IMG/VR virus record: IMGVR_UViG_3300035698_022190
Location: 62,001 to 126,000 of that record
Strand: one strand, 5' to 3'
Length of the DNA: 64,000 nucleotides
Shown here: one piece after another, positions 2,399-63,717 of the stretch
Layout of the letters: the number at the start of each line of letters is the position of its first letter
How positions within the stretch are numbered: position 1 is the stretch's first letter
Program-made: the position numbers and the translations under genes
The notes under the pieces: generated by a model
What the model saw: the letters and a program-made list of their open reading frames with translations, nothing else
Databases searched by the model: none
Told to the model about the DNA's origin: nothing

Positions 2399-2406
2399 TA
2401 ATAAAG

Positions 2407-2435
2407 TTGCTTTTAAACTGAGAATTACTTATATT
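2407..2435 (+). promoter_or_regulatory. sigma70-type promoter TTGCTT-N17-TATATT
   Basis: Intergenic; the same TTGNNN-17-TATATT pattern occurs at 7 sites in the window. Confidence 0.6.
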
Positions 2436-2460
2436 TAAGAGAACATAAACCAGCTTAAAC

Positions 2461-2679
2461 ATGCCCTACTTAGAAGAACTAAACTCCGAAATTGCAAATG
2501 CAGCCGCAATAAATCAAGAACGTCTTACAGTTATTGAGGATTTAAATAGTAAACTTGATGAAATACGACAGAGTCTCTCTATTACTCAAGAAGCTTATGT
2601 AATTGAGCAGCAACGTATGGAAGGCTTGACAGCCGCTCGTACTCTATATTTAAAAACCAAAGAAAAAGATGGAAATTAA
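2461..2679 (+). CDS. Small coiled-coil hypothetical protein
   Basis: ORF downstream of promoter; heptad pattern. Confidence 0.65.
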   Translation: MPYLEELNSEIANAAAINQERLTVIEDLNSKLDEIRQSLSITQEAYVIEQQRMEGLTAARTLYLKTKEKDGN

Positions 2680-2792
2680 AGATATAGGTCCGTCTTACCG
2701 AAAGGAAAATGAAACCTTTCAGGATTATAAAATTCGTCAAAGAAAAGAAAATAGATTTATTAAACAATATTTAAAAGGAAAGAATATCTGGA

Positions 2793-3785: not shown

Positions 3786-3883
3786 AGGCCCTAGGTGTCA
3801 GATGGGTGACAGTGAGTCTTCAAAACTTTTCCCCCTTGTGTCCAAAGCAAGGTGCGTGGGTTCAATTCCTACAGGGCCTGCCA
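3786..3883 (+). tRNA. Opal suppressor tRNA (anticodon UCA), probably Trp-accepting
   Basis: Acceptor AGGCCCT/AGGGCCT-G-CCA, loop CTTCAAA (TCA at 3820-3822), T-arm GTGGG-TTCAATT-CCTAC, long variable arm. Confidence 0.85.
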
Positions 3884-11734: not shown

Positions 11735-12727
11735 ACTGTGTATATTAAACTTATCTACTTAAGATACGTAATTCCTTCTTAGGTGGAATCCTATACACGA
11801 ACTGACATCTCAGACCACGGCATCTCCAGTCGCCCGCTTCTCCTGCTTCCGGGTTTGTTCACGGCGCCTTCGATCCTCATCGATCGTGAGGTTGGGGCCG
11901 GTCAATAAGTACAGCGGTATTTTCTGCCTAGGTCCCATAGCTAGCTGCGGCCTTAGCACGACGGAGACCGACGGGCTTTAGAACCGGGCTGAGCTCTGCG
12001 CCATCCCATGGAGAGAAGCAGACGCCGCACGTAGTGCGAGATCCGGGACTCTGATGGAGGGCGAGTACTCGAAGAAGTTACGGCTAAAAAGTCATAAAGT
12101 CAAGGAGCTTTTGGAACACGGGCCTTCGGGAGCGCAGCGCTGCTGCGGTTCGAAGGTACCTTCCGTTCGCGACCTGTCGCACCGGCTATTGAAACGTTGC
12201 CAGTACTCTGGTGGCGGACGCGGGATACACGGTCCACATTTACATGTGCACGTGTCGCCGCGACCCCAGTCATCCGGGTGATCACCGGCTCAGTGCCCGC
12301 TGGGCATTTGGCTGGAGACCTCGAGAAGAGATGGAGGCCCACGACGTTCTTGGCCTGAATTCGCGAGACGTGTCTCACCGGCCTGGCATTCCAAAAGGAG
12401 CCGCGTCTTCGGCGCAGTACCTGCAGCTGTTAAGCCGCGTCGACATGCGGGAGGAGTTGGGGCCTGGAATGCACGCTCACATTACTGCGGGTCGTGGGGA
12501 TGTGTGGATATCAGTCAGAATGAATGACCGTTGGAAATAAATCCGATCGCGCAGCTTCTTGTAGGGCACGGCTTCCGGTTGATTCGGTGTTTTACCGAAT
12601 TCAAGTATTAAGGATGTCGTGGCTCTCAAGAGCTGTCGCACCAGGATTTATTTTGCAGCGGACATTCGTCCTTCGTTAGAAACGAAGCGTTTCTAAATTA
12701 GTAGTTCTGCGATTCTTATAATCACAC
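11735..12727 (-). ncRNA. Retron-like cassette G (giant, GC-rich, palindrome-dense); boundaries tentative
   Basis: Conserved hairpin AGAAACG-CUU-CGUUUCU (12678-12694); imperfect terminal IR 11738-11749/12716-12727; ~57% GC core. Confidence 0.5.
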
Positions 12728-12734
12728 TACCGAC

Positions 12735-13031
12735 AATTTTATACTGTGTGTAACATTTTTAGGGAAATAATATTAGTTGATACCCTTTTTGGTTGCGTGT
12801 GGCCATAAGCGGGCAAGAAAGCGGAACGCTTGACTTGACCGGTATGGACTGACGACCCAAAAGTGGGTAGACAACTCATAATATTTCCTTCAAGTTATAT
12901 ACAAGACTGTGACCCTGGAAAGAGGGAGGGTGCAGGTGAGAATATAACTTTCTTCTGTTTTTTAAAAAACAGTCACGGAAAGCGAAACACTTCCCCTGTC
13001 TTATTTTCATAAAACATACTTCTATAAAATT
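12735..13031 (-). ncRNA. Retron-like msr/msd cassette F
   Basis: IR AATTTTATA/TATAAAATT, G13022 opposite G12744, hairpin GGAAGUG-UUU-CGCUUUCC, long hairpin 12761-12890. Confidence 0.75.
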
Positions 13032-13036
13032 TGTGT

Positions 13037-13270
13037 TTTGTTATACTGAGTCGTGAGGCGTAGCAACCGCGTCACTCAATGCAGTACTGGGAGCTTCAGG
13101 TTTGTCGTTTAGACGTTCTTGGAGCGCTCAAGGCCCTTTCTTCACGAGAAGGGCGGCTAGGCGCCCACCTGAAGCGCAATACTGCTTCATTTATTGTAAT
13201 GCTCATCACAATAACGTCTATAAAAACGAAACGTTTCTATTGATCTTATTGATCTATACTCTATAACTAA
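13037..13270 (-). ncRNA. Retron-like msr/msd cassette E
   Basis: IR TTTGTTATA/TATAACTAA, G13261 opposite G13046, hairpin AGAAACG-UUU-CGUUUUU, long hairpin 13081-13185. Confidence 0.75.
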
Positions 13271-13276
13271 TTTTTT

Positions 13277-13565
13277 TTAACTATACTAAAGAAGTGATAA
13301 CTTCTTTTCTAAGGAGAAAATGTATATTCCTGTCAACCGGTTAGAGACCGGTCGATTAAAATTTTAGACAGCGGGATTCCAAAGAAGACCCGAAGAATCC
13401 TGAGGGGCTTCTGAGAATCAGATGTTCTAAAATTGTTAATCCAAGACCGGGTGCTTACCGGTAGGAGTATATACTTCATCCGTGGTGTGGCAAATTGCTT
13501 CACCCTCAATAGAGACGAAACGTCCCCAACAGTGTTTACACACTGGATAAGAAAACTATAGTTAA
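13277..13565 (-). ncRNA. Retron-like msr/msd cassette D
   Basis: IR TTAACTATA/TATAGTTAA, G13556 opposite G13286, hairpin GGGACG-UUU-CGUCUC, long hairpin 13321-13472. Confidence 0.78.
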
Positions 13566-13578
13566 GTTTTGTTGTTTG

Positions 13579-13820
13579 ATAATTATACTAAATCCCCTAG
13601 GGGATTGGTCATTCAAGAGGTTTTGAGCCGTTGCTCTGCTCCCGGTAGTTAAAACATCTCTGATTTAACTGGCGGGTGGAGATCAACGGGCTACGAAACC
13701 TTTTGTCCATATACCGCTGTTCTACCCCATTAGTGCGGGATATGTAATTAAGACTTTAATAGTCTACCTGCAAGAACGAATCATTCTTTCTGGATATTGC
13801 TTCCAATGTACTATAATTAT
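13579..13820 (-). ncRNA. Retron-like msr/msd cassette C
   Basis: IR ATAATTATA/TATAATTAT, G13811 opposite G13588, hairpin AAGAAUG-AUU-CGUUCUU, long hairpin 13614-13705. Confidence 0.78.
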
Positions 13821-14035
13821 TCAAATTTGTTTATGTTCTTTTCTTCTTGTAGGGACAACTTATAATATTCTGTTATTAGTGGTCTTAGTTCTCTGATACC
13901 TTTTCTAGCGGGTCTTCCATATTTTTTTATACCAAATAAGAAAAATCGCTTATGTGGATGACTAAATTCCTCTAGCTTTGCCTTAATATCTTTTACTATA
14001 TCATTAGTTGTTCTTACGCTTGTACTTTGTTCCAT
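13817..14035 (-). CDS. Small basic protein, histone H1-like (Hc1-type) candidate
   Basis: G.K..GRPARK..REL..LI.EY.KLS pattern resembles Bacteroidota Hc1-like proteins. Confidence 0.45.
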   Translation of the reverse strand: MEQSTSVRTTNDIVKDIKAKLEEFSHPHKRFFLFGIKKYGRPARKGIRELRPLITEYYKLSLQEEKNINKFE

Positions 14036-32886: not shown

Positions 32887-33144
32887 TCATTTCTTCTGCG
32901 CCATATCTTTCAAACGTTGTGTTGCTTCATCAGTCGCGTCCTGTGTGAGTTCATCCATATATGCTCTTGCGCTCAATTCTAAGGCTTTATTAATAATCAT
33001 TTGTCTTTGCGCAATTAGTTTATCATAATTGACTGCTAAAGGGTTTTCTTTCATAAAGGGCGCTACTCCATTTATAACATCTTTTTCAAAGCGTTTATAT
33101 GGATCGTTGGCAAAAGGATCATATTCTTTTTTTGTATTAGTCAT
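32887..33144 (-). CDS. Hypothetical protein
   Basis: AAGGAA RBS, intact ORF. Confidence 0.6.
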   Translation of the reverse strand: MTNTKKEYDPFANDPYKRFEKDVINGVAPFMKENPLAVNYDKLIAQRQMIINKALELSARAYMDELTQDATDEATQRLKDMAQKK

Positions 33145-33205
33145 ATAAATTCCTTAAATAAAAAAAGACACGGCAGAAAGGTCCACCGTGTCTTTACATA
33201 TAATT

Positions 33206-33487
33206 TTAATCTGCGACTATAATCTCAGGTTCAATGGTCGATTTAACTGGTTGTTGAGCGTCCTCTAAAACTTCGACTTCAAGTGCTTGTATGCCTTTTT
33301 CTGTTGGCTTTTCAATAAAAGTAACTATTTGATCTTTTCTTAATTTTCTATAGCCTTCTTGTTTAAGCTCAGTATAATGGACAAAAATTTGTCCTTTTGC
33401 TTCGTCTTCTGTGGTTACGAAGCCATATCCAAGTGCTGGATTAAACCATTCTACGACCCCATGGGTGCGTTCTTGTGTAACAGCCAT
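33206..33487 (-). CDS. Cold-shock domain protein
   Basis: GVVEWFN..GYGFV..IFVHY RNP motifs. Confidence 0.9.
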   Translation of the reverse strand: MAVTQERTHGVVEWFNPALGYGFVTTEDEAKGQIFVHYTELKQEGYRKLRKDQIVTFIEKPTEKGIQALEVEVLEDAQQPVKSTIEPEIIVAD

Positions 33488-33541
33488 CTATTTGTTTCCT
33501 TGTTTTATATTGTTTAATACATATAACTCTTTTTATATGTG

Positions 33542-33943
33542 TGGAGCTGCGGGTATCGAAACCCGGTCCGAAATAAAGTCCCATAGAACCTTAATTACAA
33601 GTATTATATCTCGATATAAGGAGCTCGGCGTTCGAGATCAAAACGTTTGTGAGCTAATACTAGTTTCATTTTTGAATTGGGAAATTGTAGCTAAACACCA
33701 ATTATGTCTACATGGTTAGACGTTATAGACCCCGCCAAGCTTTCATGTTTCTCGGTAAGCTTTACGTCACATTAGCTAACCCGCGTAAGCGAAGTTAGAA
33801 TGACCGACTTGCCCTTGAGCAAGTAAGTTCACTGGTATGTTTTTGCCAGTTATTGTTTGTTTTTGAATATGTTTAACGAGAGAAATTCATTTCTCGACTT
33901 GTAGTTTTATCTTCTCTTATCCCGTCGAATCCAATTCAGCCCC
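33542..33943 (-). ncRNA. ssrA: tmRNA
   Basis: 5' GGGGCTGAATTGGATTCGAC, 3' T-arm and GCTCCA, ATAACT-GGC resume site with tag ORF. Confidence 0.93.
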
Positions 33944-33949
33944 ATATTT

Positions 33950-34210
33950 TTATTTATCAAAGGTCCACCAATTATAGTTATATAATATAGTGTTCCTGGC
34001 CTGATCCGCAAATGGAACAGGTTCATGTGTTATACGTTTTGTGGTTACATAGTTTCCACGATATTTTCCTGTGTAGTGAATTTTATGACCAGCTTGTTTT
34101 GCCATCTGCTGTCCTAATTTAATTTCATCATCAGTTAAATACAAATTTTGTTTTATCTGTGAACATCCTACAAATATAAGAATGCTTAGGATTACTGTGA
34201 AAATTTTCAT
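33950..34210 (-). CDS. Putative lipoprotein
   Basis: Signal peptide with FVGC lipobox; GGAG RBS. Confidence 0.65.
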   Translation of the reverse strand: MKIFTVILSILIFVGCSQIKQNLYLTDDEIKLGQQMAKQAGHKIHYTGKYRGNYVTTKRITHEPVPFADQARNTILYNYNWWTFDK

Positions 34211-34253
34211 AACTAGGTCTCCGTTTACAAGATTCTTATACCATAATAGATTA

Positions 34254-35110
34254 GCAAAGGGTACTGTCTATCGCTACCCACCAGTTCAGACCCTATCAGT
34301 CGCACCGCTGAATACGGATACCTTAAGGTGATGGACGAATCGCTCACACGTTTCCCTTTGCCAAAGTTTCTGAGATTAGTAAGGAATTGACGGGTATACC
34401 CGTATAGTCACCTTACGCCGCTTCCGTTTACCTGCACGACTTACGCTATTACTCCTACAGTTTCAAGTGAAGCCAAGTTCTCTTCATTTAATGTCGTGTT
34501 TTGCATTCTACTCTGCCATAACCTCAGATTAAATTTTTAGATCACTGGTCAGCCACCTTCAAAATAAACATTTCAAAGTATCTTAATAGTTCGCTTCCCA
34601 TCGCTATTTAACGACGTCCTTCCTTCAAAGAGGTTTCGCTGCCCGCGGGGTAACCTCACCACATTGCTGTGTAATTTTATCTCGGTCTTGCGCCGGAGCC
34701 TTGTCCGCTGCGTGATCTAATTTTAAACTAAACACCCCTAAGAGCTGGACCGTAACCTGGGTCTTTCAAGGGTTCTCGTTTGGGTGCGGTACTATAACCC
34801 TTTATTCCATCGTTAGTTTAAAAATTTTAAGGGCAGAATGTCCAAGAAATGACCTCACGCTGTTCATGCAACGCTGCTTCATAATCTTTTAGAACAACTA
34901 CCCCAATTTACTGCTACAAAGTTTGGCCCACTTAGATTTTTGACCAGTTGCCTTTCGGTGACCTCTACCCGTTACGATAGATACTGATTCGCTCGACCAT
35001 ATGGGACTCTTCATAGCAGATTTTTTTCATCGGTTGGTTCGTCCTTAGCTCACAATAGTCAGCCAACAAACCGTAGCTTTAAGGGCGTCGGACGATAGAG
35101 TATTAACCTC
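34254..35110 (-). ncRNA. Cluster of unassigned structured RNAs
   Basis: ORF-free; successive blocks closed by terminal stems and separated by AAATTTT linkers; strand inferred from context. Confidence 0.5.
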
Positions 35111-35136
35111 TACACAATGAAAAATTTAAAAATGTT

Positions 35137-35236
35137 AAAACAAGTAGGATTCGAACCTACAACCCTTGGGACTTACTTGACACGCCCAAGACTCTAATGA
35201 GCTTACGTACCTTCCATAGCCATTCACCTTGTTTAA
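35137..35236 (-). ncRNA. Aberrant tRNA-like RNA
   Basis: Canonical T-arm GTAGG-TTCGAAT-CCTAC and AAACAAG acceptor-like stem; no normal anticodon loop. Confidence 0.45.
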
Positions 35237-36144
35237 AAGAGTAACAATATTTCCTCGTCACAGAAATACCGTCCCTTCACTATGCAGAAGTGCTTTACCA
35301 TATTCGGCCATTGTTTTAATTTTGTTAAAAATGTTTTTGAGACAGGTAGTTGGTCTACAAGCGAGGTTTTGCACCTCAAGCATTGCTACTTTCTGACATC
35401 TATCAATCCTTGCGGGATATATAGTCACTGTGCTCAGGCTACCATGCCACTGTCTCAAATGTTTTGTTGTACTCGTGGACAATTTTATGGGACTCTGTCG
35501 TGCACGACTACGATTGATTTCACCCAACCACTTCACCATTCACAGCTAATGCGATAGCTCCCGGTATCGAAGCACAACAAAAACGTTTTTTAAATGTAGG
35601 GACAGCTGACTACGTTACTAGTCAAGCTTCGTCAAGCAGCAAATGTGCGTAAGCCTTGCGAGCCACGAGCGGAATCGAACCGCCCATAACCGTACATTTG
35701 ATATCATTTTGATTATGGTTTTAACGCTACACCAAGCATTCGCTACACCCTCCAGTGCTTCTGTCCCTAATGTTATTGATTGTGGCAGGATTTGAGCCTG
35801 CGACAAGTTTTCTGTCATGTCCTAATCCGAACCCACATCGTGCGGGATCACATTTTAGAATTGGCCCTACTGGAACATTACACTATAGGATAGGGATGTA
35901 TAATGCCCATACGGGTATGCCTTACCAGCATTTCACGATTATTCGTTTCACAACCAATTTAATTCTTTTGAAGCAGCCAGCATTAGAACTATCTTTCCCC
36001 ACGTACGTTCGCTAGTGGTGGTAATACTGATCAAGTATTTAACCGCATGAACGCCTCTGGACTACCAGATATTTATTTAGGGGCCTTTCTTCGCACGTCC
36101 AGAAAGCATCGTAGCTGGCGACTCGTGTGTCATTGCTTCAAATT

Positions 36145-36219
36145 TGGAAGCCCCGAGTGGTGTCGAACCACTGTTGCCAGGATCAAAACCTGGTGTCATG
36201 CCGTTAGACCACGGGGCCA
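36145..36219 (-). tRNA. tRNA-Gln(UUG)
   Basis: Cloverleaf, loop TTTTGAT, CCA. Confidence 0.9.
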
Positions 36220-36477
36220 ATGTAGTAGAATAGTTAACTGCTTTTCATTTTCAGATATTTCAGTATGTACTTGAAAGAAGCTCTCACCTCGTACATAAAG
36301 CGCATTTTAGGGGCCTTACCGGAAGACTGTGTACCATTCCGTTCTTACCCTCATCGGTCTCTTGCCGTAGCGGACTAAACTCTAGCTCAGAAAAGCTTAC
36401 CAGAAGCATTGTCTCTTATTCCCAGTATATTAAATTGGCCTGTTTATATACTGCTTTTGTTAACTATCCTACAAATT

Positions 36478-36588
36478 CTGGGGGCAAAACATTTCAGCCT
36501 TGCGACCTCTAATCCTAGGTGATTGCAAGTTCGCGCGAAACTTTATAGCAATTACCGTGTTAGCACTCTTTATACTGAGCTACCCCAG
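36478..36588 (-). ncRNA. tRNA-like RNA with greatly extended anticodon arm
   Basis: CTGGGG-TAGCTCAG D-arm start, ~45-nt hairpin in place of the anticodon loop, degenerate T-arm. Confidence 0.45.
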
Positions 36589-36591
36589 CTG

Positions 36592-36660
36592 TGGCGGTAG
36601 AGAGTCTTGATCTCTCGAACGAGGGCGTATGAAGCCCTGTTTACTTCCCAGCTTACCGCC
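36592..36660 (-). tRNA. tRNA with CAU anticodon, reduced D-arm
   Basis: AGGGC-TTCATAC-GCCCT; GGCGGTA acceptor. Confidence 0.6.
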
Positions 36661-36665
36661 GAACT

Positions 36666-37022
36666 TTAGAAATTAAAATAAGGTTTTCTAATAGACCCTG
36701 GCAACAGATTTTTAATATTTTCTGCGCCTACAGGATTTAAAGAATGTATAACTATTTCCGCCGAATACCCATCTACACCCTTCTCTTTTAAATGTTTGGC
36801 AAAAGTTGATCCAGTATTTAAATTTAAAGTACTGACCATTACTTTTCCGCCAAGATCATGGTCGAGATAGTATTTATCAAATGGAGCATTCTCATCGTGC
36901 AGTTTTTTCGCTTCTTCTATTTCTTCAGCAAAAAAAAGTTTTGCATCCGGATATTGTGCAGAGAGTTTTGCTACAAAACCTCTAATCCTGTATATGTTGT
37001 CTTCCAATATGAATATTTTCAT
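36666..37022 (-). CDS. Receiver-like (cyclic-phosphate-processing) domain protein
   Basis: IFILED, LDHDLG, IHSLNPVGA. Confidence 0.75.
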   Translation of the reverse strand: MKIFILEDNIYRIRGFVAKLSAQYPDAKLFFAEEIEEAKKLHDENAPFDKYYLDHDLGGKVMVSTLNLNTGSTFAKHLKEKGVDGYSAEIVIHSLNPVGAENIKNLLPGSIRKPYFNF

Positions 37023-37023
37023 G

Positions 37024-37096
37024 AGCCAATGAAGGGCTACGATCCCTTGACTTCCGGTTTACCGAACCGGTACTCTGCCGACTGAGTTACATTGGC
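37024..37096 (-). tRNA. tRNA-Thr(GGU)
   Basis: Cloverleaf, loop TCGGTAA. Confidence 0.85.
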
Positions 37097-37101
37097 AAAT
37101 C

Positions 37102-37396
37102 TGACGAGCGCTCTGCCACTAAGCTACATGACCGGAATAGTCATACCAGGATTCGAACCTGGGCCTCTCCCCGTATGGACGTCTTACCTTAGACCATTAG
37201 CGATTCCGCGTTAGCGCTATGCAAGTTTCGAGCTTGCGTTTTCCTTTTTAAATTTGGAGGTGTCCTAACCAATTAGACGACATGCCCCCGAAGGGACAAG
37301 CCGGGATTCGAACCCGTATTTCCTCGCTTGAAGGTGTCCTAACCACTAGACGACCTGGGTTGCCCCAGGACAGGAGTTGAACCTGTGTTTCCTTCC
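37102..37396 (-). ncRNA. Four tandem circularly permuted tRNA-like (YrlA-module-like) RNAs
   Basis: Order T-arm, loop-capped acceptor stem, D-arm; ends in anticodon stem; UUCG and GCAA caps. Confidence 0.75.
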
Positions 37397-37399
37397 TTG

Positions 37400-37473
37400 A
37401 GCCAGAGACAGGGTTCAAACCTGTATGCCCCAGTTTACGAAACTGGTGCCATTTTCTCTTCAGCCACTCTGGC
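37400..37473 (-). tRNA. tRNA-Thr(CGU)
   Basis: Cloverleaf, loop TTCGTAA. Confidence 0.85.
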
Positions 37474-37594
37474 ATAAATTTTAGTAGAGGGACGGCGCTT
37501 GCCTAGTCCGCCCCTCTTTTTCGTTTACCTTATTTTTAAATAAGAACCAACCTGTAAGGTTTGAATTTACGGTTTTTGTCTTTTTCATAAATTT

Positions 37595-37775
37595 GGTGCA
37601 TGTTTAACCCGACTTTCTTCACACTCTTTTTTTATTCTAATCTCCTTGTTCTGCCACTGAACTATTGGCGCGCAGAATACTTCGTAAAGTACACTGCGCG
37701 CCAACCGGGATTCGAACCCAGGCGTAGGATTTGAAACAACTAAATGTTGCTATAAAGAGTCGATACTTGTCAAAA
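37595..37775 (-). ncRNA. Y-RNA (YrlA)-like RNA
   Basis: T-arm, long capped acceptor-like stem TTGGCGCGCAG/CTGCGCGCCAA, D-arm, distal TCGAC/GTCGG stem. Confidence 0.65.
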
Positions 37776-37905
37776 GTTATGTCCGCGTGTACACTATAGA
37801 GCGATACACTAAAATGTAATAATAATGATAATAGCTTTCGTGTTACTTATGTTTAAGCATTATTTTTATAACACTCCCGCTTTTTATACTGATGCTAGCT
37901 CAAAA

Positions 37906-38661
37906 TTATTTTATAGTATTACCAAATATATGGTTTACTATATTTTGCCCAACCTTGGTGTCTACGACATTAGCTTGGTTTGCTTTAGCGCGTGCTTTCT
38001 TAACCTTAAAAAGTAGATCGTCTGCACGGGCTAATAAATCTGATTTGTCAGCAGGCGTAATTCTGCCGGAAAGATACATTGTGTCCCAGGTACCAACGGC
38101 TTTATCTACAGTTACTACTTGAACTTGTTCTTTGTGTTCTTTAGTAGCTGCAGCCAAACTTAATGGTGTATGCACTTTGTTAAATCGAATTTTCTTTTCT
38201 ACCGGAGTACCCAAGATTGCTCGATCATCTTTATCTAACGGTTGCCATACACGTGTTGGATCTAGTGTTGGAATCGTTTTTAAAACACTGCGAAACTGAG
38301 TTAATTGATTTTCTAGCGACAAAAAGCTTGTTGCTGAAAGTGTCATTTCAATTCCGTCTATAGTAATTGGAGCTGTTGCGTTTCCTGAAGAGTTAGTTTG
38401 CTCTTTGGAAATTAAAGCGTCGACAGCAGGTACAAAAGATTTTACAGTATACTTTAATTTTTCTGCTACTGTAGTTACTACTTCTTTTCGTTCGTCCTGT
38501 AAATCTCCAGCTTCAACATCAATAGCTGTATAATCTTTTTTCAGACCATCAAAATGCGAGTCTTTTTTCTGAAAAGTATGGATTGTTTCATTAATTATAT
38601 TTTGGCTTTGGGTACTTAGTGGACCTGTAACTGCCAAAATCTGATGTAGTTGATTTGCCAT
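37906..38661 (-). CDS. Conserved hypothetical protein upstream of Y-like RNA
   Basis: LHQILAV, IPTLDP, VKKARAKAN; AGGA RBS. Confidence 0.8.
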   Translation of the reverse strand: MANQLHQILAVTGPLSTQSQNIINETIHTFQKKDSHFDGLKKDYTAIDVEAGDLQDERKEVVTTVAEKLKYTVKSFVPAVDALISKEQTNSSGNATAPITIDGIEMTLSATSFLSLENQLTQFRSVLKTIPTLDPTRVWQPLDKDDRAILGTPVEKKIRFNKVHTPLSLAAATKEHKEQVQVVTVDKAVGTWDTMYLSGRITPADKSDLLARADDLLFKVKKARAKANQANVVDTKVGQNIVNHIFGNTIK

Positions 38662-43362: not shown

Positions 43363-43430
43363 TTTTTTCCTAAAAGATGAAAGGTTTTCATCACTTGTTC
43401 TTATACCAAGTTTCTTATTGTAAATCTTTG

Positions 43431-45211: not shown

Positions 45212-45220
45212 GTAATTAAA

Positions 45221-45438
45221 TAATATTCCATAGCCAGGATTCTGTTCTATCCTATGATTTCTCTGTTGGCATCTACCTTTGCATTATAGAGCTGCTTTCC
45301 CTCTAGCTATTTTGAATTGCTCCCTGGGAAGTGCTGACGATTGTTATTCGAGTTCCTTTTAACAATCTCCTTCCGTTAGCAGTGGAGTCCTGAGCTTCCT
45401 CTCATCCCTTTCGGGGTAGAGCCATAGGTCGAATATTA
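45221..45438 (-). ncRNA. rnpB: Miniature RNase P RNA
   Basis: P1 TAATATTC/GAATATTA; GAGGAAGCTCAGGACT and ACAGAATCCTGGCTAT form P4; GGAGCAA and AGAGAAAT conserved motifs. Confidence 0.8.
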
Positions 45439-45443
45439 TTTTG

Positions 45444-49769: not shown

Positions 49770-49909
49770 TTTATTGCTAATTCCTTATATTATTAATTAG
49801 TATATAGCTTGTTACAAAAAAAATACATAAGATCTAGGTGTTGCTAAAATTCTTATACCAGAAAAGGCCAACATATTGCTGGCCTTTTTAGTTCAATGTT
49901 TAAGAGTTA

Positions 49910-55867: not shown

Positions 55868-57030
55868 TCTTCAAGTCCTAGTATTTGTTTAGATATTTTT
55901 ATTGCCTCTGGCGTTCCTGTGTTTTTACCTTCTACATCAGATAATTTAACAGTTGGCTGCCACTTTCCGTTACGTCCTAAAACATCCGTCATTTTAATAA
56001 CGATGTTCAACGGCTTAACGCCGGGAATGTCATTAGATAGTGCTGTGCCTATACCATAAGATGTGTGAAATAAATTGCCCACACGTTGTTTTAATTTTGC
56101 TGCTGAATCTACAGTTAAGCCATCGGAAAATACAATCGACTTGCTGCCTGGATCAATTCCTTTATCCATATAATGCTTTATCATTTTTTGATAAAAATCA
56201 AAAGGATCTCCGCTGTCTTGTCTAACACCATCAAACAACCGTGCAAACCTATTTCCAAAAGATAATAAAAATTGTTCTGTTGTATAAGTGTCTGTTAATG
56301 CAATACCTAAATTGCCTTGATAAACCGATACCCATTTTTTCATTCCCATATAATTTGCTGATGGATATCCATATTTAGTAGCATGGAACATATACCACTC
56401 GTGTGCCTGAGTCCCTATAGCTTTTAATTTATATTCCTTCGCTAAGTAAACATTGCTAGTACCTATTAAAGCGCCCAAAGCTTTTAATTCTTCAACAACT
56501 TGTTTTTGGGTCGAAAAAGAAAATCTACGGCGAGTACCAAATTCTGCCACAGACATTTCGTTTCCCTTTATGATCTCTGCTTTAGCTGTATTTGTTTTAG
56601 TTAAAACTTCCGGATCGTATTTCTGTCCTGTCATTTTAAAATAAGTCTCAGAAATTAAAGCTAAGAGGGGCACTTCCCATAAAATAGCGCGGTACCACGG
56701 CCCTTGAATAGTTAGACTAAATTTTCCATCTTTTTGTTCCATTTGGATTTCAGAGGGTTGATATCTATATGCCTTTAAAAAGTCTACATAAGGAGGACTA
56801 AGATATGAACAATGTTCTAATAAGAAATCTTTTTCTTCATAATGTAATGTCAAATGGCCCATATAATGTATTTTAGGCCATAACTCTTTAACGAACCCTT
56901 CTGGATAAACTGTATTGCCACGATCAATAAATTTATATTTAACGATAGCCCGTGGATATTTTTGTATGACTGCGTTTTGCATAGCATATTTATACAAATC
57001 ATTATCTGTAAAATGTTCTATAAATCCCAT
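55864..57030 (-). CDS. pncB: Nicotinate phosphoribosyltransferase
   Basis: DNDLYK, EFGTRRR, GTSNV, GTQAHEW, RQDSGDP, VFSDGL, VKLSD. Confidence 0.93.
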   Translation of the reverse strand: MGFIEHFTDNDLYKYAMQNAVIQKYPRAIVKYKFIDRGNTVYPEGFVKELWPKIHYMGHLTLHYEEKDFLLEHCSYLSPPYVDFLKAYRYQPSEIQMEQKDGKFSLTIQGPWYRAILWEVPLLALISETYFKMTGQKYDPEVLTKTNTAKAEIIKGNEMSVAEFGTRRRFSFSTQKQVVEELKALGALIGTSNVYLAKEYKLKAIGTQAHEWYMFHATKYGYPSANYMGMKKWVSVYQGNLGIALTDTYTTEQFLLSFGNRFARLFDGVRQDSGDPFDFYQKMIKHYMDKGIDPGSKSIVFSDGLTVDSAAKLKQRVGNLFHTSYGIGTALSNDIPGVKPLNIVIKMTDVLGRNGKWQPTVKLSDVEGKNTGTPEAIKISKQILGLEE

Positions 57031-57040
57031 TGTGTTTCTC

Positions 57041-57904
57041 CTAAAATAGTATTGACGCTTTCGAGTTCCAGGACGTATATAAATGTCCATCTTCTTGAAA
57101 AATTAAGGACCTTAAGTCAGTTCCAGATGATTGCTCTTGAATACAATAATCTATAGAAACAACGGACACTCCTTCCACATCATATACCATTTCTCCAGTA
57201 TTTAATGTTCGAATGTGCTGTCCATTTTTCTTTATCATTTTTTCAAGATCTTCCTGCATTTTTTCATACTGACCATTATCTGCATGTTTTGCTATCCAGG
57301 CATGTGGTATAAAATCTTGTATATTATATGTAGGCACTGTCAATTTTCGTAAAAGTAGTTGTTTAATTTTATGTACTTTACAAAAAGTCAGTAATTTACG
57401 TGCTGTTAAATCTCCTAGTTGGTCCGAGACATTTACTGTAATGCGCGGTGTCATCCAAATATTTAAACCTTCAGCACTTGAAATTGTTCGCATTTCCTTA
57501 AATACCGGCCTCATCTTATCGAGCTGTGTTTTGCTGTCAATCGAAATAGCTATCGTATCATACCCTCTGGACCATAAATGTCCCACATACTCTGGATTCT
57601 TCATCAAGAATAACCCATTAGTCTGCAGCTCCAATGGCCACTCTCTAAAGCTTTTAGCCATGTTATCAACCCTGCTTCTGCTTCTTTCATTAACCAACGG
57701 CTCGCCCTTTCCGGTAATAAGTACACTAGTAATTCCAGCACTTTCTGCAACTTTTTTAACCTTTAATTTATTTCTTCCCATAAGGGATGGACTGGGATTT
57801 TCTTCATAACCAGTCATCTTACTTATGCAGTACTTACAATCTTTGTCGCAGCCCTCATAGGGCATAGCGATTGTAAGATTTTCTGATCTAAGTGATGCGC
57901 TCAT
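57041..57904 (-). CDS. Radical SAM protein
   Basis: CDKDCKYC, ITGKGEP, QTNG. Confidence 0.85.
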   Translation of the reverse strand: MSASLRSENLTIAMPYEGCDKDCKYCISKMTGYEENPSPSLMGRNKLKVKKVAESAGITSVLITGKGEPLVNERSRSRVDNMAKSFREWPLELQTNGLFLMKNPEYVGHLWSRGYDTIAISIDSKTQLDKMRPVFKEMRTISSAEGLNIWMTPRITVNVSDQLGDLTARKLLTFCKVHKIKQLLLRKLTVPTYNIQDFIPHAWIAKHADNGQYEKMQEDLEKMIKKNGQHIRTLNTGEMVYDVEGVSVVSIDYCIQEQSSGTDLRSLIFQEDGHLYTSWNSKASILF

Positions 57905-58290
57905 AATTTACCCCTGTTTTTTTCTATAGCTTCTAAAATTTCAAAGACTCGCTGGGCACACCAACGCATGCCTTCCTCAGGCTCATAAAAACCACCTGTG
58001 TCCATCATCCCTTCATCATCAAATTTGGAAATCATTGCCAATATTTTAGGACTGGGAGAAGTTACATCGGATTGGATGTCGAGAGTCAAGCCTATACCGC
58101 GATCACAGGCAAATGGGACCAGATAGCCCCAAATGGTGCGTATGTTTACTGCTTGTACTAAGTGTTTACTTATTACTCTGCCCGAAGCTAGTAAATTTAA
58201 CTTTCCATTGCTTTCGTCCCAACAATAATCTTGGAAATCTTCCATAGTTTTTGTTGTTTCATGCTTTAAATAAGTTGCTTTCCACCTCAT
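57901..58290 (-). CDS. Hypothetical protein
   Basis: ATGA-coupled. Confidence 0.6.
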   Translation of the reverse strand: MRWKATYLKHETTKTMEDFQDYCWDESNGKLNLLASGRVISKHLVQAVNIRTIWGYLVPFACDRGIGLTLDIQSDVTSPSPKILAMISKFDDEGMMDTGGFYEPEEGMRWCAQRVFEILEAIEKNRGKL

Positions 58291-58484
58291 GCTTCTTCTC
58301 TTGGTAATAATATTATTTTTGCGTCGGGAACCAACGCTAGTTTTATACTTTCTTCAAAAATAGCATATGTTGTTCTGGAGGCTATTACCCGCTCAATATC
58401 GTTGCGACCCCGCACGACGTTGTCATGCTTACAGCCGTCCATCACTAACAATGTTTTTTTCCCACCTATTTGGTGTATGAACAT
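58287..58484 (-). CDS. Small hypothetical protein
   Basis: AGGAG RBS, ATGA-coupled. Confidence 0.55.
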   Translation of the reverse strand: MFIHQIGGKKTLLVMDGCKHDNVVRGRNDIERVIASRTTYAIFEESIKLALVPDAKIILLPREEA

Positions 58485-58552
58485 ATAATTTGTTCTCCTG
58501 TGTTTTTATTCAATAGTAGTGTGACTATAAGAATCAAAAACAAAAATGTTTT

Positions 58553-58720
58553 TTATTTTAGTACTAGATACATCACAGCAAAAAATCCAAGTATAATAGT
58601 TAAAGGTATGCCAACCGGGGCCAGTACCCAAAACCATGACCAATGTATAAAGCCGGTTAATTTTAAAGCTACAAAAAGTATTAATAAAAATCCTAGTATT
58701 CCTGGTCCATTGTTACTCAT
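58553..58720 (-). CDS. Small membrane protein (absent from ORF track)
   Basis: MSNNGPGILGFLLILFVALKLTGFIHWSWFWVLAP...; AGGAG RBS. Confidence 0.7.
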   Translation of the reverse strand: MSNNGPGILGFLLILFVALKLTGFIHWSWFWVLAPVGIPLTIILGFFAVMYLVLK

Positions 58721-59336
58721 GTGTGTCTCCTATGTCTGGGGAGTTTCCAAGAAACTCCGTTGTTAATTTGTTCATCATATTTTCATGCTTACTGCCATGC
58801 TTATAATAATTTTCTTGTTTAATAAGAATGCCGTGTGCATATTCATGTATAATTATATCTTCCCACGATTCAGTGGTGTCCTTTCCTACTATAATTTCTA
58901 CAGGTTCTTTTTTGTTAGTGGTTATAAAGCCTCCTCCATACTTTTGTTTTAAAGTTTGAAAAAAGAGAGGGATGTTGATATTATATTTGGCTTCGAGCCT
59001 ATTATATAAATCATACATTTCGTCAACCACACTTGCTTCATTTTCTAAAAAGGCATCTATAGATTTATAGTAAGACAAGACATTACATGCATATAGAAAA
59101 GCTGGGTCATCATCAATTAATATATCAGCATTGGGTGTTATTTCTGCGTCCTTTGAAACAAATGGGCAGCCCAGTAGTCTTGCTATTGCCGGACCATATT
59201 CGCTAGATGACCAAAAAGTTATATCATGCTGGAATAACTCGCCATATCTATGATGGGGCAGATACCCTGTTCCTTGGTGTATTAAAAAGGTGTCATCAAT
59301 ATCCAACAAAATCGTTTTTTGTAAAAATCTACTCAT
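58713..59336 (-). CDS. HAD-like domain fused to HExxH (SprT-like) domain
   Basis: LLDIDDT, LIDDD; IIIHEYAH..HG. Confidence 0.6.
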   Translation of the reverse strand: MSRFLQKTILLDIDDTFLIHQGTGYLPHHRYGELFQHDITFWSSSEYGPAIARLLGCPFVSKDAEITPNADILIDDDPAFLYACNVLSYYKSIDAFLENEASVVDEMYDLYNRLEAKYNINIPLFFQTLKQKYGGGFITTNKKEPVEIIVGKDTTESWEDIIIHEYAHGILIKQENYYKHGSKHENMMNKLTTEFLGNSPDIGDTHE

Positions 59337-62532: not shown

Positions 62533-63717
62533 TTAACCCTTTATTACTGCTAAGGGCCTTAATTTTGTGTGTATTCTAACAAGATCTTTTTGATTTTTCA
62601 TAACCTCATTAATATCTTTATATGCACTTGGTGCCTCATCTAGCCTACTTGCGTCTAAATCATGGACAATATATTGATCGTCAAGAGTTTTTCGCTCTTG
62701 TGCAAGATTAAGCGTTTGATTAGCTACACGTCTTCCCATTTTTCTTCCTGCACCATGTGAGCAGCTTTGAAAGGAGTCTCTGTTTCCAAGGCCTTCTACT
62801 ATATATGAGTTTGTACCCATCGATCCGGGGATAATTCCTAGTTCCCCGTCACGCGCCCTCGTAGCACCTTTACGATGTACAAGTACGTTTGCACCAAAGT
62901 GATTCTCCCACGCTGCGTAGTTGTGTGCTATATTTATTGTATGGCTTCCACAGTTAACGGTGCATGTACCTTTCATTACTCCCTGAAAAGCTTCTAGCAC
63001 ACGTGTCATCATTAGTTCTCTATTTGCCAAAGCAAAATCTACACAATATTGCATTTCTTCTAGGTAGGCTTTTCCTTCTTTTGTGTCTACAGGTAAAAAA
63101 GCCAAGTCAAAAGGTTTTGGCACACTAGTGTACCACTTTACGTTTTCAGCTTTTGCTATTTTATTGTAATGATCGGCAACTTGCTTTCCAAGATTGCGAC
63201 TCCCAGAATGTATCATAATCCAAATATGGTTCTGTTCATCTGATTGTACTTCTATGAAGTGATTACCGCCCCCCAGGGTTCCTAATTGTAATAATGCTTT
63301 ACCATAATTTCGCGCCACAACACTATCTGAGTCAGCCAATGAAACACTCTCTGGCATCATTTTCTCGTCTTGTGGTTTCTCATGCCAATTAAATCCTACA
63401 GGTACCAGCTCTTTTATTTTCTTTGTAAGAGACTTTAACATGCCTGTTGACACTTGACTAGCTAAATTTAAATTTGTTTTGTAGGCTAGCATTCCGCAGC
63501 CTATATCGACCCCCACGGCATTTGGTACTACAACCTTTTGGGTAGCCATTACGCCACCAATAGGCATACCGAAGCCGCAATGCACATCCGGCATTAAAGC
63601 TATGTGCTTATATGCGAATGGCAATTGCGATAGGTTTTGAGCCTGTGACATTGCTCCCGGCTCTATCTCCGGTGCCCAAGATTTTATTGGGACTCTTCCT
63701 TCTGTAAATACTCTCAT
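62533..63717 (-). CDS. rtcB: RNA-splicing/repair ligase RtcB
   Basis: MPDVH.G.G.PIG, VGVDIGCG, LGTLGGGNHFIE, HSGSR, HRKGAT, SHGAGR, DEAPSAYK. Confidence 0.95.
   Translation of the reverse strand: MRVFTEGRVPIKSWAPEIEPGAMSQAQNLSQLPFAYKHIALMPDVHCGFGMPIGGVMATQKVVVPNAVGVDIGCGMLAYKTNLNLASQVSTGMLKSLTKKIKELVPVGFNWHEKPQDEKMMPESVSLADSDSVVARNYGKALLQLGTLGGGNHFIEVQSDEQNHIWIMIHSGSRNLGKQVADHYNKIAKAENVKWYTSVPKPFDLAFLPVDTKEGKAYLEEMQYCVDFALANRELMMTRVLEAFQGVMKGTCTVNCGSHTINIAHNYAAWENHFGANVLVHRKGATRARDGELGIIPGSMGTNSYIVEGLGNRDSFQSCSHGAGRKMGRRVANQTLNLAQERKTLDDQYIVHDLDASRLDEAPSAYKDINEVMKNQKDLVRIHTKLRPLAVIKG

What the first reader, a model, noticed from the sequence alone, without database searches (positions are those of the whole stretch)
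34254..36590. ~2.3 kb of unassigned structured RNAs between the tRNA cluster and tmRNA
Seen: non-coding blocks, each closed by a terminal stem: 34254-34362, 34369-34530, 34537-34720, 34721-34824, ~35337-35458, ~35464-35582, 35597-35769 (internal GCGG-TTCGATT-CCGC T-arm), 35968-36141 and 36221-36473, plus two deformed tRNAs. AT-rich linkers resemble those between tRNAs. Inference: a polycistronic set of novel ncRNAs, or pieces of a large ornate RNA.
Basis: partly seen in the sequence, partly recalled or inferred. Interest (0 to 1): 0.62.

Follow-up and report, generated by a model that had tools for sequence, protein, structure and literature searches.

The report
Phage island of small structured-RNA cassettes
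A 2.45-kb gene-free stretch at the end of a jumbo phage's tRNA array holds about 16 separate small folded-RNA genes, several built on a tRNA frame like the old unexplained 'species 1' RNA of phage T4; five of them are conserved as swappable cassettes in related phages, and their function is still unknown.

Summary
Window 36665-34211 (minus strand) has no conserved ORF. It lies between a cREC gene and a small ORF plus tmRNA, inside a 210-kb phage's RNA-gene island. It splits into one normal tRNA-Gln and about 16 blocks of 70-250 nt. Each block is closed by an 8-14 bp helix and separated by 0-16 nt A/T linkers. No block reaches any Rfam threshold.

Folding energies are no better than matched controls, so the case rests on comparison with two related phage lineages. 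Five blocks (A, C, E, G, K) are 69-93% identical where neutral sites are 32-62%. Their homology ends at the terminal helices, and those helices carry compensatory changes. Block order and content differ between relatives. This supports independent RNA genes and argues against one large RNA, protein genes or wholesale junk. The other 11 blocks have no comparative support.

Blocks A, E and N have a tRNA frame (closing helix plus adjacent T-arm), as does T4 species 1 RNA. The same array carries a 226-nt RNase P RNA lacking the S-domain (45215-45440), a type found in at least nine phage tRNA arrays.

Most likely the blocks are co-transcribed with the tRNAs, excised, and act as tRNA-like decoys or cofactors in tRNA damage and repair. 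That function is inferred, and expression could not be tested.

The parts
36666..37022 (-). cREC gene (cyclic-phosphate-processing receiver domain, 118 aa). Its stop codon abuts block A in all three lineages.
   Evidence: Pfam PF20274, E 5e-12. Relatives at 82-83% identity. 28 of 66 distant cREC loci have a tRNA within 2 kb.
36591..36661 (-). Block A: deformed cloverleaf tRNA-like RNA. It has a 7-bp acceptor stem, a 3-bp D-arm, an anticodon-type loop UUCAUAC and a T-like arm with loop AUCAAGA.
   Evidence: Conserved in lineages A and B with 2 compensatory pairs in the anticodon stem. Not called by ARAGORN or the Rfam tRNA model.
36478..36590 (-). Block B: tRNA-shaped RNA (closing helix, D-like arm, long central arm, 7-bp hairpin next to the 3' strand). 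Found in the window only.
   Evidence: Fold. No homologue in relatives.
36225..36472 (-). Block C: 248-nt structured RNA with a 14-bp closing helix.
   Evidence: Homologous to L014 10692-10922 (75% identity, nhmmer E 3e-21). The closing helix is rebuilt with different letters in lineage A (13 bp). 5 compensatory pairs.
36145..36218 (-). Normal tRNA-Gln (UUG) inside the island, with encoded CCA.
   Evidence: ARAGORN. Rfam 55.8 bits. 95% identical in L020.
35967..36142 (-). Block D: 176 nt with a 9-bp closing helix. Window only.
   Evidence: It does not align with block X of the relatives.
35772..35958 (-). Block E: tRNA-framed RNA. It has a 10-bp closing helix, a small 5' hairpin, a central domain of about 130 nt, and a T-arm GCAGG-CUCAAAU-CCUGC abutting the 3' strand.
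   Evidence: Homologous to L020 1362-1562 at 69% identity. 8-9 compensatory pairs against 0-4 in slid controls. The consensus fold is -47.6 on this strand and -31.0 on the other. A covariance model built from it hits true tRNAs end to end.
35597..35769 (-). Block F: 173 nt with a 9-bp closing helix and an internal long hairpin capped by a T-loop (UUCGAUU). Window only.
   Evidence: Weak tRNA-Sec hit of 21.7 bits, E 0.73.
35462..35582 (-). Block G: 121 nt with a 13-bp closing helix.
   Evidence: 85% identical to L020 891-1017 (nhmmer E 2e-21). 4 compensatory pairs, one of them in the closing helix. Consensus fold -29.1 on this strand, -16.0 on the other.
35336..35459 (-). Block H: 124 nt with a 10-bp closing helix. 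Window only.
35135..35319 (-). Block N: 185 nt with a 9-bp closing helix and a canonical T-arm GUAGG-UUCGAAU-CCUAC abutting the 3' strand. It contains the 'deformed tRNA' at 35136-35211.
   Evidence: Rfam tRNA 27.4 bits, below the threshold of 29. Stem, T-arm.
35023..35124 (-). Block I1: 102 nt with a 10-bp closing helix.
   Evidence: z -3.5.
34911..35019 (-). Block I2: 109 nt with an 11-bp closing helix.
   Evidence: z -3.0.
34826..34905 (-). Block I3: 80 nt, closed by GGGGUAG/CUGCCCU and followed by UAAAA.
   Evidence: z -4.1 on this strand, -0.1 on the other.
34721..34823 (-). Block J: 103 nt with an 11-bp A/U-rich closing helix. This is the weakest block.
   Evidence: z -0.3.
34537..34720 (-). 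Block K: 184 nt with a 9-bp closing helix.
   Evidence: Both ends are homologous to L020 1236-1362, while about 50 nt of the interior is replaced. The closing helix shows a C-G to U-A change, and there are 5 compensatory pairs in all. Consensus fold -25.9 on this strand, -14.1 on the other.
34369..34528 (-). Block L: 160 nt with a 10-bp closing helix. Window only.
34251..34364 (-). Block M: 114 nt with an 11-bp closing helix. Window only. Its 3' strand abuts the next promoter-like site.
34233..34243 (-). Promoter-like motif TGGTATAAGAA just ahead of the 86-aa ORF. It marks the end of the RNA island.
   Evidence: 9 matches (at most 1 mismatch) in the window, all on the minus strand, against 2.3 expected. 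None lies inside the island. The same motif stands before the ORFs of L020 and L014.
33950..34210 (-). 86-aa ORF (possible lipoprotein or spanin-like), conserved in both relatives.
33539..33943 (-). tmRNA.
   Evidence: Rfam RF00023, 108.5 bits. ARAGORN.
45215..45440 (-). Outside the finding but in the same RNA array: a 226-nt RNase P RNA-like gene lacking the S-domain, set between two tRNAs with 3-nt linkers.
   Evidence: RF00010 at 48.4 bits (threshold 100), E 6e-14, spanning the full model with CR-I, CR-IV and CR-V motifs. Homologues in L014, L009 and 7 further IMG/VR tRNA arrays. Covariation includes P4.
37100..37745 (-). Outside the finding: tRNA-Thr(CGU), several acceptor-less tRNA bodies, and T-arm -> hairpin -> D-arm modules (permuted, YrlA-type order) just upstream of tRNA-Thr(GGU) and cREC.
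   Evidence: Weak tRNA hits of 17-27 bits and YrlA at 25 bits. T-arms. Sequence read. Conserved in both relatives.
62533..63717 (-). RtcB RNA ligase gene, given as context for RNA repair.
   Evidence: Pfam PF01139, E 1e-116.

Best explanation
The stretch is the distal part of a phage RNA-gene island lying on the minus strand. The island holds about 27 tRNAs, an RNase P RNA lacking the S-domain, and a tmRNA. The stretch itself encodes one tRNA-Gln and about 16 independent small structured RNAs of 70-250 nt.

Shown:
- The stretch has no conserved ORF.
- Five blocks (A, C, E, G, K) are under nucleotide-level constraint.
- Those five have borders that coincide with their terminal helices.
- Their helices are kept by compensatory changes.
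- They behave as cassettes that are gained, lost and reordered between related phages.
- Blocks A, E and N have a tRNA frame: an acceptor-like closing helix with a T-arm against its 3' strand. Block F carries a T-loop hairpin. T4 species 1 RNA has the same frame and sits at the same place in its tRNA operon.

Inferred:
- The blocks are transcribed together with the tRNAs.
- They are released at their terminal helices by RNase P, either the host enzyme or the phage's own RNase P RNA, which lacks the tRNA-elbow-reading S-domain and could therefore accept helix-only substrates.
- The A/U linkers are removed by RNase E-type cuts and exonucleases.
- The mature RNAs work in the tRNA damage and repair conflict. 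They could be decoys or sponges for host tRNA-cleaving defence nucleases or tRNA-handling enzymes, or cofactors of the phage's cREC/RtcB repair set.

The fast cassette turnover fits an arms-race locus.
For: ORF-free status.

Constraint:
- Block identities: G 85%, E 69%, K ends 82-87%, C 75%; A differs at only a few columns in 3 lineages.
- Neutral proxies: cREC third codon positions 59-62% identical, fourfold-degenerate sites 32% (L020) and 55% (L014).
- One-nucleotide indels inside conserved blocks exclude coding.

Borders: nhmmer alignments end within 0-7 nt of the helix-defined ends for C, E, G and K.

Compensatory pairs:
- Counts are E 8-9 (slid controls 0-4), G 4, K 5, C 5, A 2.
- They include the closing helices of G, K and C.

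Strand: consensus folds of E, G and K are 12-17 kcal/mol better on the minus strand.

Cassette behaviour:
- L020 carries A, a new block, Gln, X, G, a new block, K', E.
- Lineage A carries A, two Gln, X, C, a YrlA-like element, three more stem-closed blocks and an inserted 692-aa ORF.

tRNA frame: T-arms; the model built from block E hits real tRNAs end to end; fold of T4 rnaC and the T4 map.

Context:
- cREC is adjacent, and cREC is recurrently embedded in tRNA arrays.
- RtcB is present.
- The phage has an RNase P RNA lacking the S-domain.
- No promoter-like motif lies inside the island.
- Phage tRNAs are already known to counter tRNA-targeting defences (PMC10264068, PMC11555353).
Against:
- Only two related lineages exist, so each covariation count rests on 2-3 sequences.
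- Eleven of the 16 blocks (B, D, F, H, N, I1-3, J, L, M) have no homologue. Because neutral sites are saturated, they could be unconstrained spacer.
- Folding z-scores do not beat matched controls.
- With a structure taken from the window alone, blocks G and C show no excess of compensatory changes.
- Most blocks lack any tRNA feature, so RNase P recognition is conjecture for them.
- The phage has no RnpA, no CCA-adding enzyme and no Ro60.
- The decoy or repair role has no direct support.
Confidence: 0.5

Rival explanations
1. Mostly junk. The stretch is a graveyard of decaying tRNA genes and recombination scars at the variable end of the tRNA array. A few conserved pieces sit within it, and the terminal stems are chance inverted repeats in A/T-rich DNA.
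For: Eleven blocks have no homologue in relatives. Several deformed or sub-threshold tRNAs are present. Folding z-scores equal those of control segments. The chain-of-stems statistic is unexceptional. Jumbo phages tolerate slack, and other ORF-poor gaps exist in this genome.
Against: Five blocks are conserved well above saturated neutral sites, with compensatory changes and borders that match their helices. Inverted repeats of >=9 bp are about 3.5-fold enriched, and all eight coincide with block borders. Relatives show the same stem-closed cassette layout with different contents.
Confidence: 0.22
2. Cis-acting processing or stability elements. The blocks would be structured spacers that guide maturation or protect the long tRNA, cREC and tmRNA transcript, with no function as free RNAs.
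For: They lie inside a presumably polycistronic array with tRNA-like linkers. There is no internal promoter-like motif or terminator on this strand.
Against: 2.4 kb and about 16 different folds is far more than processing requires. The tmRNA and the 86-aa ORF follow a separate promoter-like site. Relatives manage with 1.0 kb and a different set of blocks. Internal sequence, not only the helices, is conserved in C, G and K.
Confidence: 0.1
3. Y-RNA-type module. The blocks would be Y RNA-like (YrlA-like) RNAs that tether an RNA quality-control or repair machine, as in the rsr-yrlA-rtcB operons of bacteria.
For: Lineage A has a YrlA hit of 40 bits (E 3e-7) with T-arm, acceptor hairpin and D-arm inside its island. 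Permuted T -> hairpin -> D modules lie at 37100-37745. RtcB and cREC are present. Chen et al. 2014 found YrlA in phages (PMC4201824).
Against: No block within 34254-36590 scores above 17.6 bits for YrlA. The Ro-binding stem is not matched even in lineage A. The genome has no TROVE/Ro60 gene. Weak YrlA hits also arise at plain tRNA-tRNA junctions.
Confidence: 0.07
4. One large ornate RNA of the GOLLD or ROOL kind, which often lie next to tRNAs in phages. The blocks would be its domains.
For: Size (2.4 kb), dense structure and position beside tRNAs.
Against: Neither ROOL nor any other large-RNA family matches, even at E<=10. Blocks are reordered and individually present or absent in close relatives. 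A normal tRNA-Gln and A/T linkers interrupt the stretch.
Confidence: 0.04
5. Unrecognised small protein genes.
For: ORFs of 30-93 aa exist on both strands.
Against: The longest ORFs have no Pfam or PHROG match. ORFs overlap on both strands. Conserved blocks carry 1-nt indels. Conservation does not follow the ORFs: block H, which holds half of the 93-aa ORF, is absent from L020.
Confidence: 0.03

Closest known systems
Phage T4 'species 1' and 'species 2' stable RNAs (rnaC, rnaD)
   Same: These are non-tRNA small RNAs of 139 and 119 nt. They sit at the distal end of the phage tRNA operon, on the same strand, 1-6 nt from their neighbours. rnaC folds with a closing helix and a canonical T-arm (GGGUUCGAAUCCC) next to its 3' end, the same frame as blocks A, E and N. 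Their function is still unknown.
   Different: T4 has two such RNAs and this stretch has about 16. There is no sequence homology: the only nhmmer hit is a 9.9-bit match driven by the T-arm, outside the finding. Most blocks here lack a T-arm. The cassette turnover between close relatives is shown here and is not, to my knowledge, described for T4.
Bacterial and phage Y RNA-like YrlA (Rfam RF02553; PMC4201824)
   Same: It is a tRNA mimic of about 100 nt closed by a terminal stem, linked to RtcB-type RNA repair operons and known in some phages. A sub-threshold YrlA-type element lies in the island of lineage A.
   Different: No Ro60 gene is present. No block of the finding reaches even a third of the gathering score. 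The Ro-binding stem is not matched.
GOLLD and ROOL large RNAs of phages
   Same: They are unexplained, highly structured RNAs that sit next to tRNA genes in phage genomes.
   Different: Those are single RNAs of 580-800 nt with fixed architecture. This stretch holds many short independent units whose order varies. No covariance-model match was found.
tmRNA tRNA-like domain
   Same: The acceptor helix and T-arm frame a large inserted domain, as in block E.
   Different: The blocks have no resume codon or tag reading frame and no pseudoknot series. The true tmRNA lies 300 nt downstream.
Phage tRNAs that evade or replenish against tRNA-cleaving defences (PMC10264068, PMC11555353)
   Same: They share the genomic home (the phage tRNA array), and a tRNA-targeting host-phage conflict is a plausible selective force.
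   Different: Those are decoding-competent tRNAs. The blocks here cannot decode.

Membership tests
   A cmscan of all 4227 families found none at threshold and none even at E<=10 in 33000-38000. ROOL RF03087 found nothing in the whole genome. My two attempts to query GOLLD by accession used wrong numbers, so GOLLD rests only.
YrlA (Y RNA-like) | Covariance-model score of at least 69 bits | tested here: not met
   The best score inside the finding is 17.6 bits (window 35079-35188). The best in the window is 25 bits at 37110-37163.
YrlA (Y RNA-like) | Ro60/TROVE gene within about 4 kb on the same strand (PMC4201824) | tested here: not met
   No TROVE match in the 210-kb genome at E<=1. The control genomes matched.
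YrlA (Y RNA-like) | tRNA-like domain in the order T-arm, acceptor hairpin, D-arm | tested here: not met
   No block of the finding has this order. It is present upstream at 37100-37745 and in L017 1327-1426.
YrlA (Y RNA-like) | GNCGAAN(0-1)G motif near the 5' end | tested here: inconclusive
   GACGAAG occurs in block F, but in its 3' third (sequence read).
T4 species 1/2-type stable RNAs of phage tRNA operons | Non-tRNA gene at the distal end of a phage tRNA operon, on the same strand, separated by short linkers | tested here: met
T4 species 1/2-type stable RNAs of phage tRNA operons | tRNA-like frame (closing helix plus T-arm at the 3' side), as in rnaC | tested here: inconclusive
   Met for blocks A, E and N. 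Partly met for B and F. Not met for C, D, G, H, I1-3, J, K, L and M.
T4 species 1/2-type stable RNAs of phage tRNA operons | Sequence homology to rnaC or rnaD | tested here: not met
   nhmmer gave only a 9.9-bit hit driven by the T-arm, at 37792-37705.
T4 species 1/2-type stable RNAs of phage tRNA operons | Accumulates as a discrete stable RNA during infection | not testable with these tools
tRNA | Cloverleaf scoring at least 29 bits in RF00005, or an ARAGORN call | tested here: not met
   Only tRNA-Gln 36145-36218 passes. 35136-35211 scores 27.4 bits, and block A is not detected.
Single large structured RNA | All domains co-occur in a fixed order in relatives | tested here: not met
   Order and content differ in L020 and L014.
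Structured RNA gene (generic) | Helices kept by compensatory substitutions beyond controls | tested here: inconclusive
   Clear for block E (8 against 0-4 in slid controls). Seen in the closing helices of G, K and C. Not above control for G and C with a window-only structure. Only 2-3 sequences per block.

The most novel reading that the evidence does not exclude
The island is an RNA-made counter-defence arsenal. Each cassette would be excised by the phage's own RNase P RNA, which lacks the S-domain and so could read a bare terminal helix instead of a tRNA elbow. Each mature RNA would then neutralise a different host RNA-targeting immune nuclease or feed the cREC/RtcB repair pathway. On this reading the locus evolves by cassette exchange, like an anti-CRISPR locus, but with RNAs in place of proteins.
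Probability: 0.12. Interest if true: 0.85.

Novelty: new variant of a known kind. Interest (0 to 1): 0.62.

Why it matters
Non-tRNA stable RNAs in phage tRNA operons have been known since T4 species 1 and 2, and have stayed unexplained for about 50 years. This locus offers a much larger, diversified set of about 16 units in one array. It comes with natural cassette-swap variants in relatives and a telling neighbourhood: cREC, RtcB, tmRNA and a phage RNase P RNA.

If the RNAs are expressed, the locus gives a tractable way to ask what such RNAs do. It would also test whether phages use tRNA-framed RNAs as decoys against the many newly found tRNA-cleaving defences. The work also shows that Rfam-blind structured RNAs can be validated by cassette borders in relatives even when folding energies say nothing.

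Tried and rejected
**Searches that found nothing**
I did not try another route.
- Phage GenBank collection, blastn distant mode with the whole stretch: no match.
- IMG/VR protein-guided scans with the DUF7873 and SNF2 neighbours: none. With cREC, only relatives at 31-44% identity and no homologous blocks.
- IMG/VR exact scans with conserved 22-23-mers of blocks G and E: 0 hits.
- Genome-contig scan with the 27-mer of block A: 0 hits.
- Metagenome scan with the cREC alignment: one close relative, already in hand.
- Protein word search with the 86-aa ORF: no candidates.
- The DUF7873 relative at 88% identity (L083) ends before the island.

**Statistics that did not discriminate**
- MFE z-scores do not separate the blocks from matched controls.
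- The chain-of-abutting-stems statistic is not discriminating either.

**Other analyses**
- Self-comparison shows the blocks are not paralogues of each other.
- Block D is not an expanded version of block X of the relatives.
- The covariance model of block E found no further homologues, only tRNAs.
- The 692-aa ORF in lineage A's island is not Ro60. It has no Pfam or PDB match, belongs to phrog_33734, and the Atlas gives it 'TerD family'-type names. I treat it as an unrelated inserted gene.
- Searches used wrong Rfam accessions for GOLLD (my error) and say nothing.
- The genome search with RF00010 missed the RNase P-like element, although cmscan aligns it at 48 bits. I trust the alignment.

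Full report
**Setting**

The window is bases 62001-126000 of a 210-kb IMG/VR virus record that CheckV rates as complete. The phage encodes split and fused multisubunit RNA polymerase genes, NAPRTase, a MoxR ATPase and RtcB.

All genes around the finding are on the minus strand. Read 5' to 3' on that strand, the layout is:
- a tRNA array, 45601 down to 37023 (26 ARAGORN calls plus two extra Rfam tRNAs);
- a cREC gene, 37022-36666 (PF20274);
- the 2.45-kb stretch, 36665-34211;
- a promoter-like motif, 34243-34233;
- an 86-aa ORF, 34210-33950;
- tmRNA, 33943-33539 (108.5 bits);
- a cold-shock protein gene.

**Checking the observation**

The stretch has no ORF above 93 aa. The two longest overlap on opposite strands and match nothing in Pfam or PHROGs.

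It also reproduces the T-arm inside 35597-35769.

At E<=10 it gives only a 27.4-bit tRNA (35136-35211), a 21.7-bit tRNA-Sec hit in block F, and noise.

I tested whether this exceeds chance. Perfect inverted repeats of at least 9 bp spanning 80-250 nt number eight here, against 2.27 expected from the rest of the genome (P=0.002). All eight are block borders.

Two other statistics are not impressive:
- A chain of five abutting stem-closed segments is reached in 5 of 193 genome windows.
- The blocks' mean folding z-score (-2.5) equals that of inverted-repeat-closed segments drawn from coding DNA (-2.3, better strand taken).

Thermodynamics therefore proves nothing here.

**Relatives**

The cREC protein led to two related lineages at 82-83% identity:
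- Lineage A comprises L014-L018 and L022, from ENA and JGI assemblies.
- Lineage B is L020.

No others were found in IMG/VR, JGI metagenomes, GTDB genomes or GenBank phages.

Neutral sites between these phages are close to saturation. cREC third codon positions are 59-62% identical, and fourfold-degenerate sites are 32% (L020) and 55% (L014) identical.

Against that background:

| Block | Relative | Identity |
|---|---|---|
| A | both lineages | a few differing columns |
| tRNA-Gln | L020 | 95% |
| G | L020 | 85% |
| K (ends) | L020 | 82-87% |
| C | lineage A | 75% |
| E | L020 | 69% |

The nhmmer alignments stop within 0-7 nt of the helix-defined borders at all eight ends.

Several helices are kept by compensatory change:
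- Block E has 8-9 double changes, against 0-4 when the partner columns are slid.
- The closing helices of G and K each carry a C-G to U-A exchange.
- The closing helix of C is rebuilt from different letters in lineage A (14 bp against 13 bp).
- Block A has two compensated pairs in its anticodon-type stem across three lineages.

Consensus folds of E, G and K are 12-17 kcal/mol better on the minus strand than on the plus strand. One-nucleotide indels inside conserved blocks rule out coding.

The evidence has limits. Each comparison has only 2-3 sequences. With a structure predicted from the window alone, G and C show no excess over controls.

**Cassette behaviour**

Between cREC and the small ORF the three lineages carry different sets:
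- The window has 16 blocks plus tRNA-Gln (2.45 kb).
- L020 has A, a private block, Gln, block X, G, a private 220-nt block, K with a replaced interior, and E (1.0 kb). The order there is G-K-E, against E-G-K in the window.
- Lineage A has A, two tRNA-Gln, X, C, a YrlA-like element, three further stem-closed blocks, and an inserted 692-aa gene with its own promoter-like motif.

Block X, shared by the two relatives but absent here, also shows compensated hairpin changes (5 against 0-1 in controls).

This pattern excludes one large RNA with a fixed architecture. It fits independently evolving genes.

The 11 window-only blocks cannot be judged. With neutral sites saturated, lack of homology does not separate cassette replacement from absence of constraint.

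**What the blocks look like**

Four non-tRNA blocks carry T-arm-type hairpins. In A, E and N the T-arm abuts the 3' strand of the closing helix, as in a tRNA. In F a T-loop caps a long internal hairpin.

A covariance model built from block E finds no further homologues. Its weak full-span hits are all genuine tRNAs, mostly long-arm Leu or Tyr. Block E is therefore a tRNA frame around a domain of about 130 nt.

T4 shows the same thing. rnaD and rnaC ('species 2' and 'species 1', small stable RNAs) follow the last tRNA of the T4 array with 1-6 nt linkers. rnaC folds with a closing helix and a canonical T-arm at its 3' side. There is no sequence homology to the blocks.

Blocks C, D, G, H, I1-3, J, K, L and M have no tRNA feature.

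A short motif recurs in C, G and I3: GGGU(R)… hairpin … G-CCC-N-UAAAA. Five of the twelve CCCHTAAA sites in the window fall in these 2.3 kb. I cannot explain it.

**Context and mechanism**

cREC is proposed to process 2',3'-cyclic phosphate RNA ends and is linked to RNA ligases in jumbo phages (PMC7824862). Among 66 distant cREC loci, 28 have a tRNA or tmRNA within 2 kb. The phage also has RtcB. It has no Ro60, no CCA-adding enzyme and no RnpA.

Following sub-threshold hits led to an unexpected element in the same array. Window 45215-45440 (minus), between two tRNAs, aligns over the full bacterial RNase P RNA model at 48 bits, with the specificity domain deleted. The universal CR-I, CR-IV and CR-V motifs are present.

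Homologues stand in lineage A, in a distant cREC phage (L009) and in seven more IMG/VR contigs. All lie inside tRNA arrays on the tRNA strand. Covariation includes helix P4.

I found no paper in the library that links RNase P RNA to huge or jumbo phages.

My best account is therefore as follows. The blocks are co-transcribed with the tRNAs; no promoter-like motif or terminator lies inside the island. They are released at their terminal helices by RNase P, either the host's or the phage's RNase P RNA lacking the S-domain. The linkers are trimmed. The mature RNAs act as tRNA-like decoys or cofactors in the conflict over tRNA cleavage and repair, which phage tRNAs are already known to enter (PMC10264068, PMC11555353).

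Conservation, borders, compensation and the tRNA frames are shown. Transcription, processing and function are inferred.

**Comparison with known kinds**

The closest match is the T4 species 1/2 class. Position and, for some blocks, architecture are the same. Number, diversity, turnover and sequence differ.

YrlA membership fails on score, on Ro60 linkage and on domain order within the finding. YrlA-type permuted tRNA modules do occur just upstream (37100-37745) and in lineage A. ROOL, 6S, SRP, Y RNA and (by only) GOLLD fail by covariance model.

**Verdict**

The locus is real and unassigned. For five blocks there is evolutionary support that they are structured RNA genes. For the other eleven the matter is open.

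I rate it a new variant of a known but unexplained kind. Interest is 0.62, limited by the lack of expression data and by only three lineages.

Noticed in passing
window 45215-45440 (-); also L014 2342-2643, L009 5103-5308, L098 7141-7276, L099 438-632, L102 4201-4519, L100/L104/L105: A 226-nt RNase P RNA-like gene without the specificity domain lies between two tRNAs. It scores 48.4 bits on RF00010 (threshold 100) with the CR-I, CR-IV and CR-V motifs. Homologues occur in at least nine other phage contigs, always inside tRNA arrays, with covariation in P4 and other helices. The phage has no RnpA gene. I found no paper describing phage-encoded RNase P RNA. This may be more notable than the finding itself.
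   Followed up: yes
L100 1507-2327, L104 1977-2797, L105 963-1783: In three IMG/VR contigs the RNase P-like RNA matches in two pieces about 650 nt apart. This suggests an insertion (an intron or a mobile gene) inside it.
   Followed up: no
window 37100-37745 (-): Upstream of cREC there is a run of acceptor-less tRNA bodies and modules ordered T-arm -> hairpin -> D-arm (permuted, YrlA-type). One example is 37745-37640, with an 11-bp GC-rich hairpin. The run is conserved in both relatives.
   Followed up: partly
L017 1327-1426 (= L014 10963-11062): Lineage A's island holds a YrlA-like tRNA mimic (40.3 bits, E 3e-7, below the threshold of 69). Its Ro-binding stem is not matched.
   Followed up: partly
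L017 4899-5129 and 5087-5581: In lineage A a group I intron (73.9 bits) and an HNH endonuclease gene lie at the 3' end of the tmRNA gene. Both are absent from the window.
   Followed up: no
L014 11471-13549: A 692-aa gene (phrog_33734; no Pfam or PDB match; 'TerD family'-type names in the Atlas) is inserted in lineage A's RNA island behind its own TGGTATAAGAA-like motif.
   Followed up: partly
window 34233-34243, 43398-43408, 49850-49860 and six one-mismatch sites, all on the minus strand: TGGTATAAGAA recurs 9 times against 2.3 expected and stands just upstream of ORFs in the window and in relatives. It is likely a phage promoter element of the extended -10 type.
   Followed up: partly
window 36306-36313, 36076-36083, 35484-35491, 35078-35085, 34826-34833 (-): Five of the window's twelve CCCHTAAA sites fall in the 2.3 kb. 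In blocks C, G and I3 they close a GGG/CCC helix and are followed by UAAAA, and they are conserved in relatives. The motif is unexplained; it could be a protein-binding or processing site.
   Followed up: partly
window 710-2792 and 12541-14013; genome G000 56623-59100, 144745-146777, 148812-150427: Other stretches of 1.5-2.5 kb lack any ORF of 100 aa or more. They were not examined for RNA genes.
   Followed up: no
window 3786-3883 (+): ARAGORN calls a tRNA-SeC (anticodon UCA), far from the main array and on the other strand.
   Followed up: no
66 loci with cREC relatives (L003-L082): cREC genes are recurrently embedded in phage tRNA arrays. 28 of 66 loci have a tRNA or tmRNA within 2 kb, with 91 tRNAs in 169 kb of flank.
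   Followed up: partly
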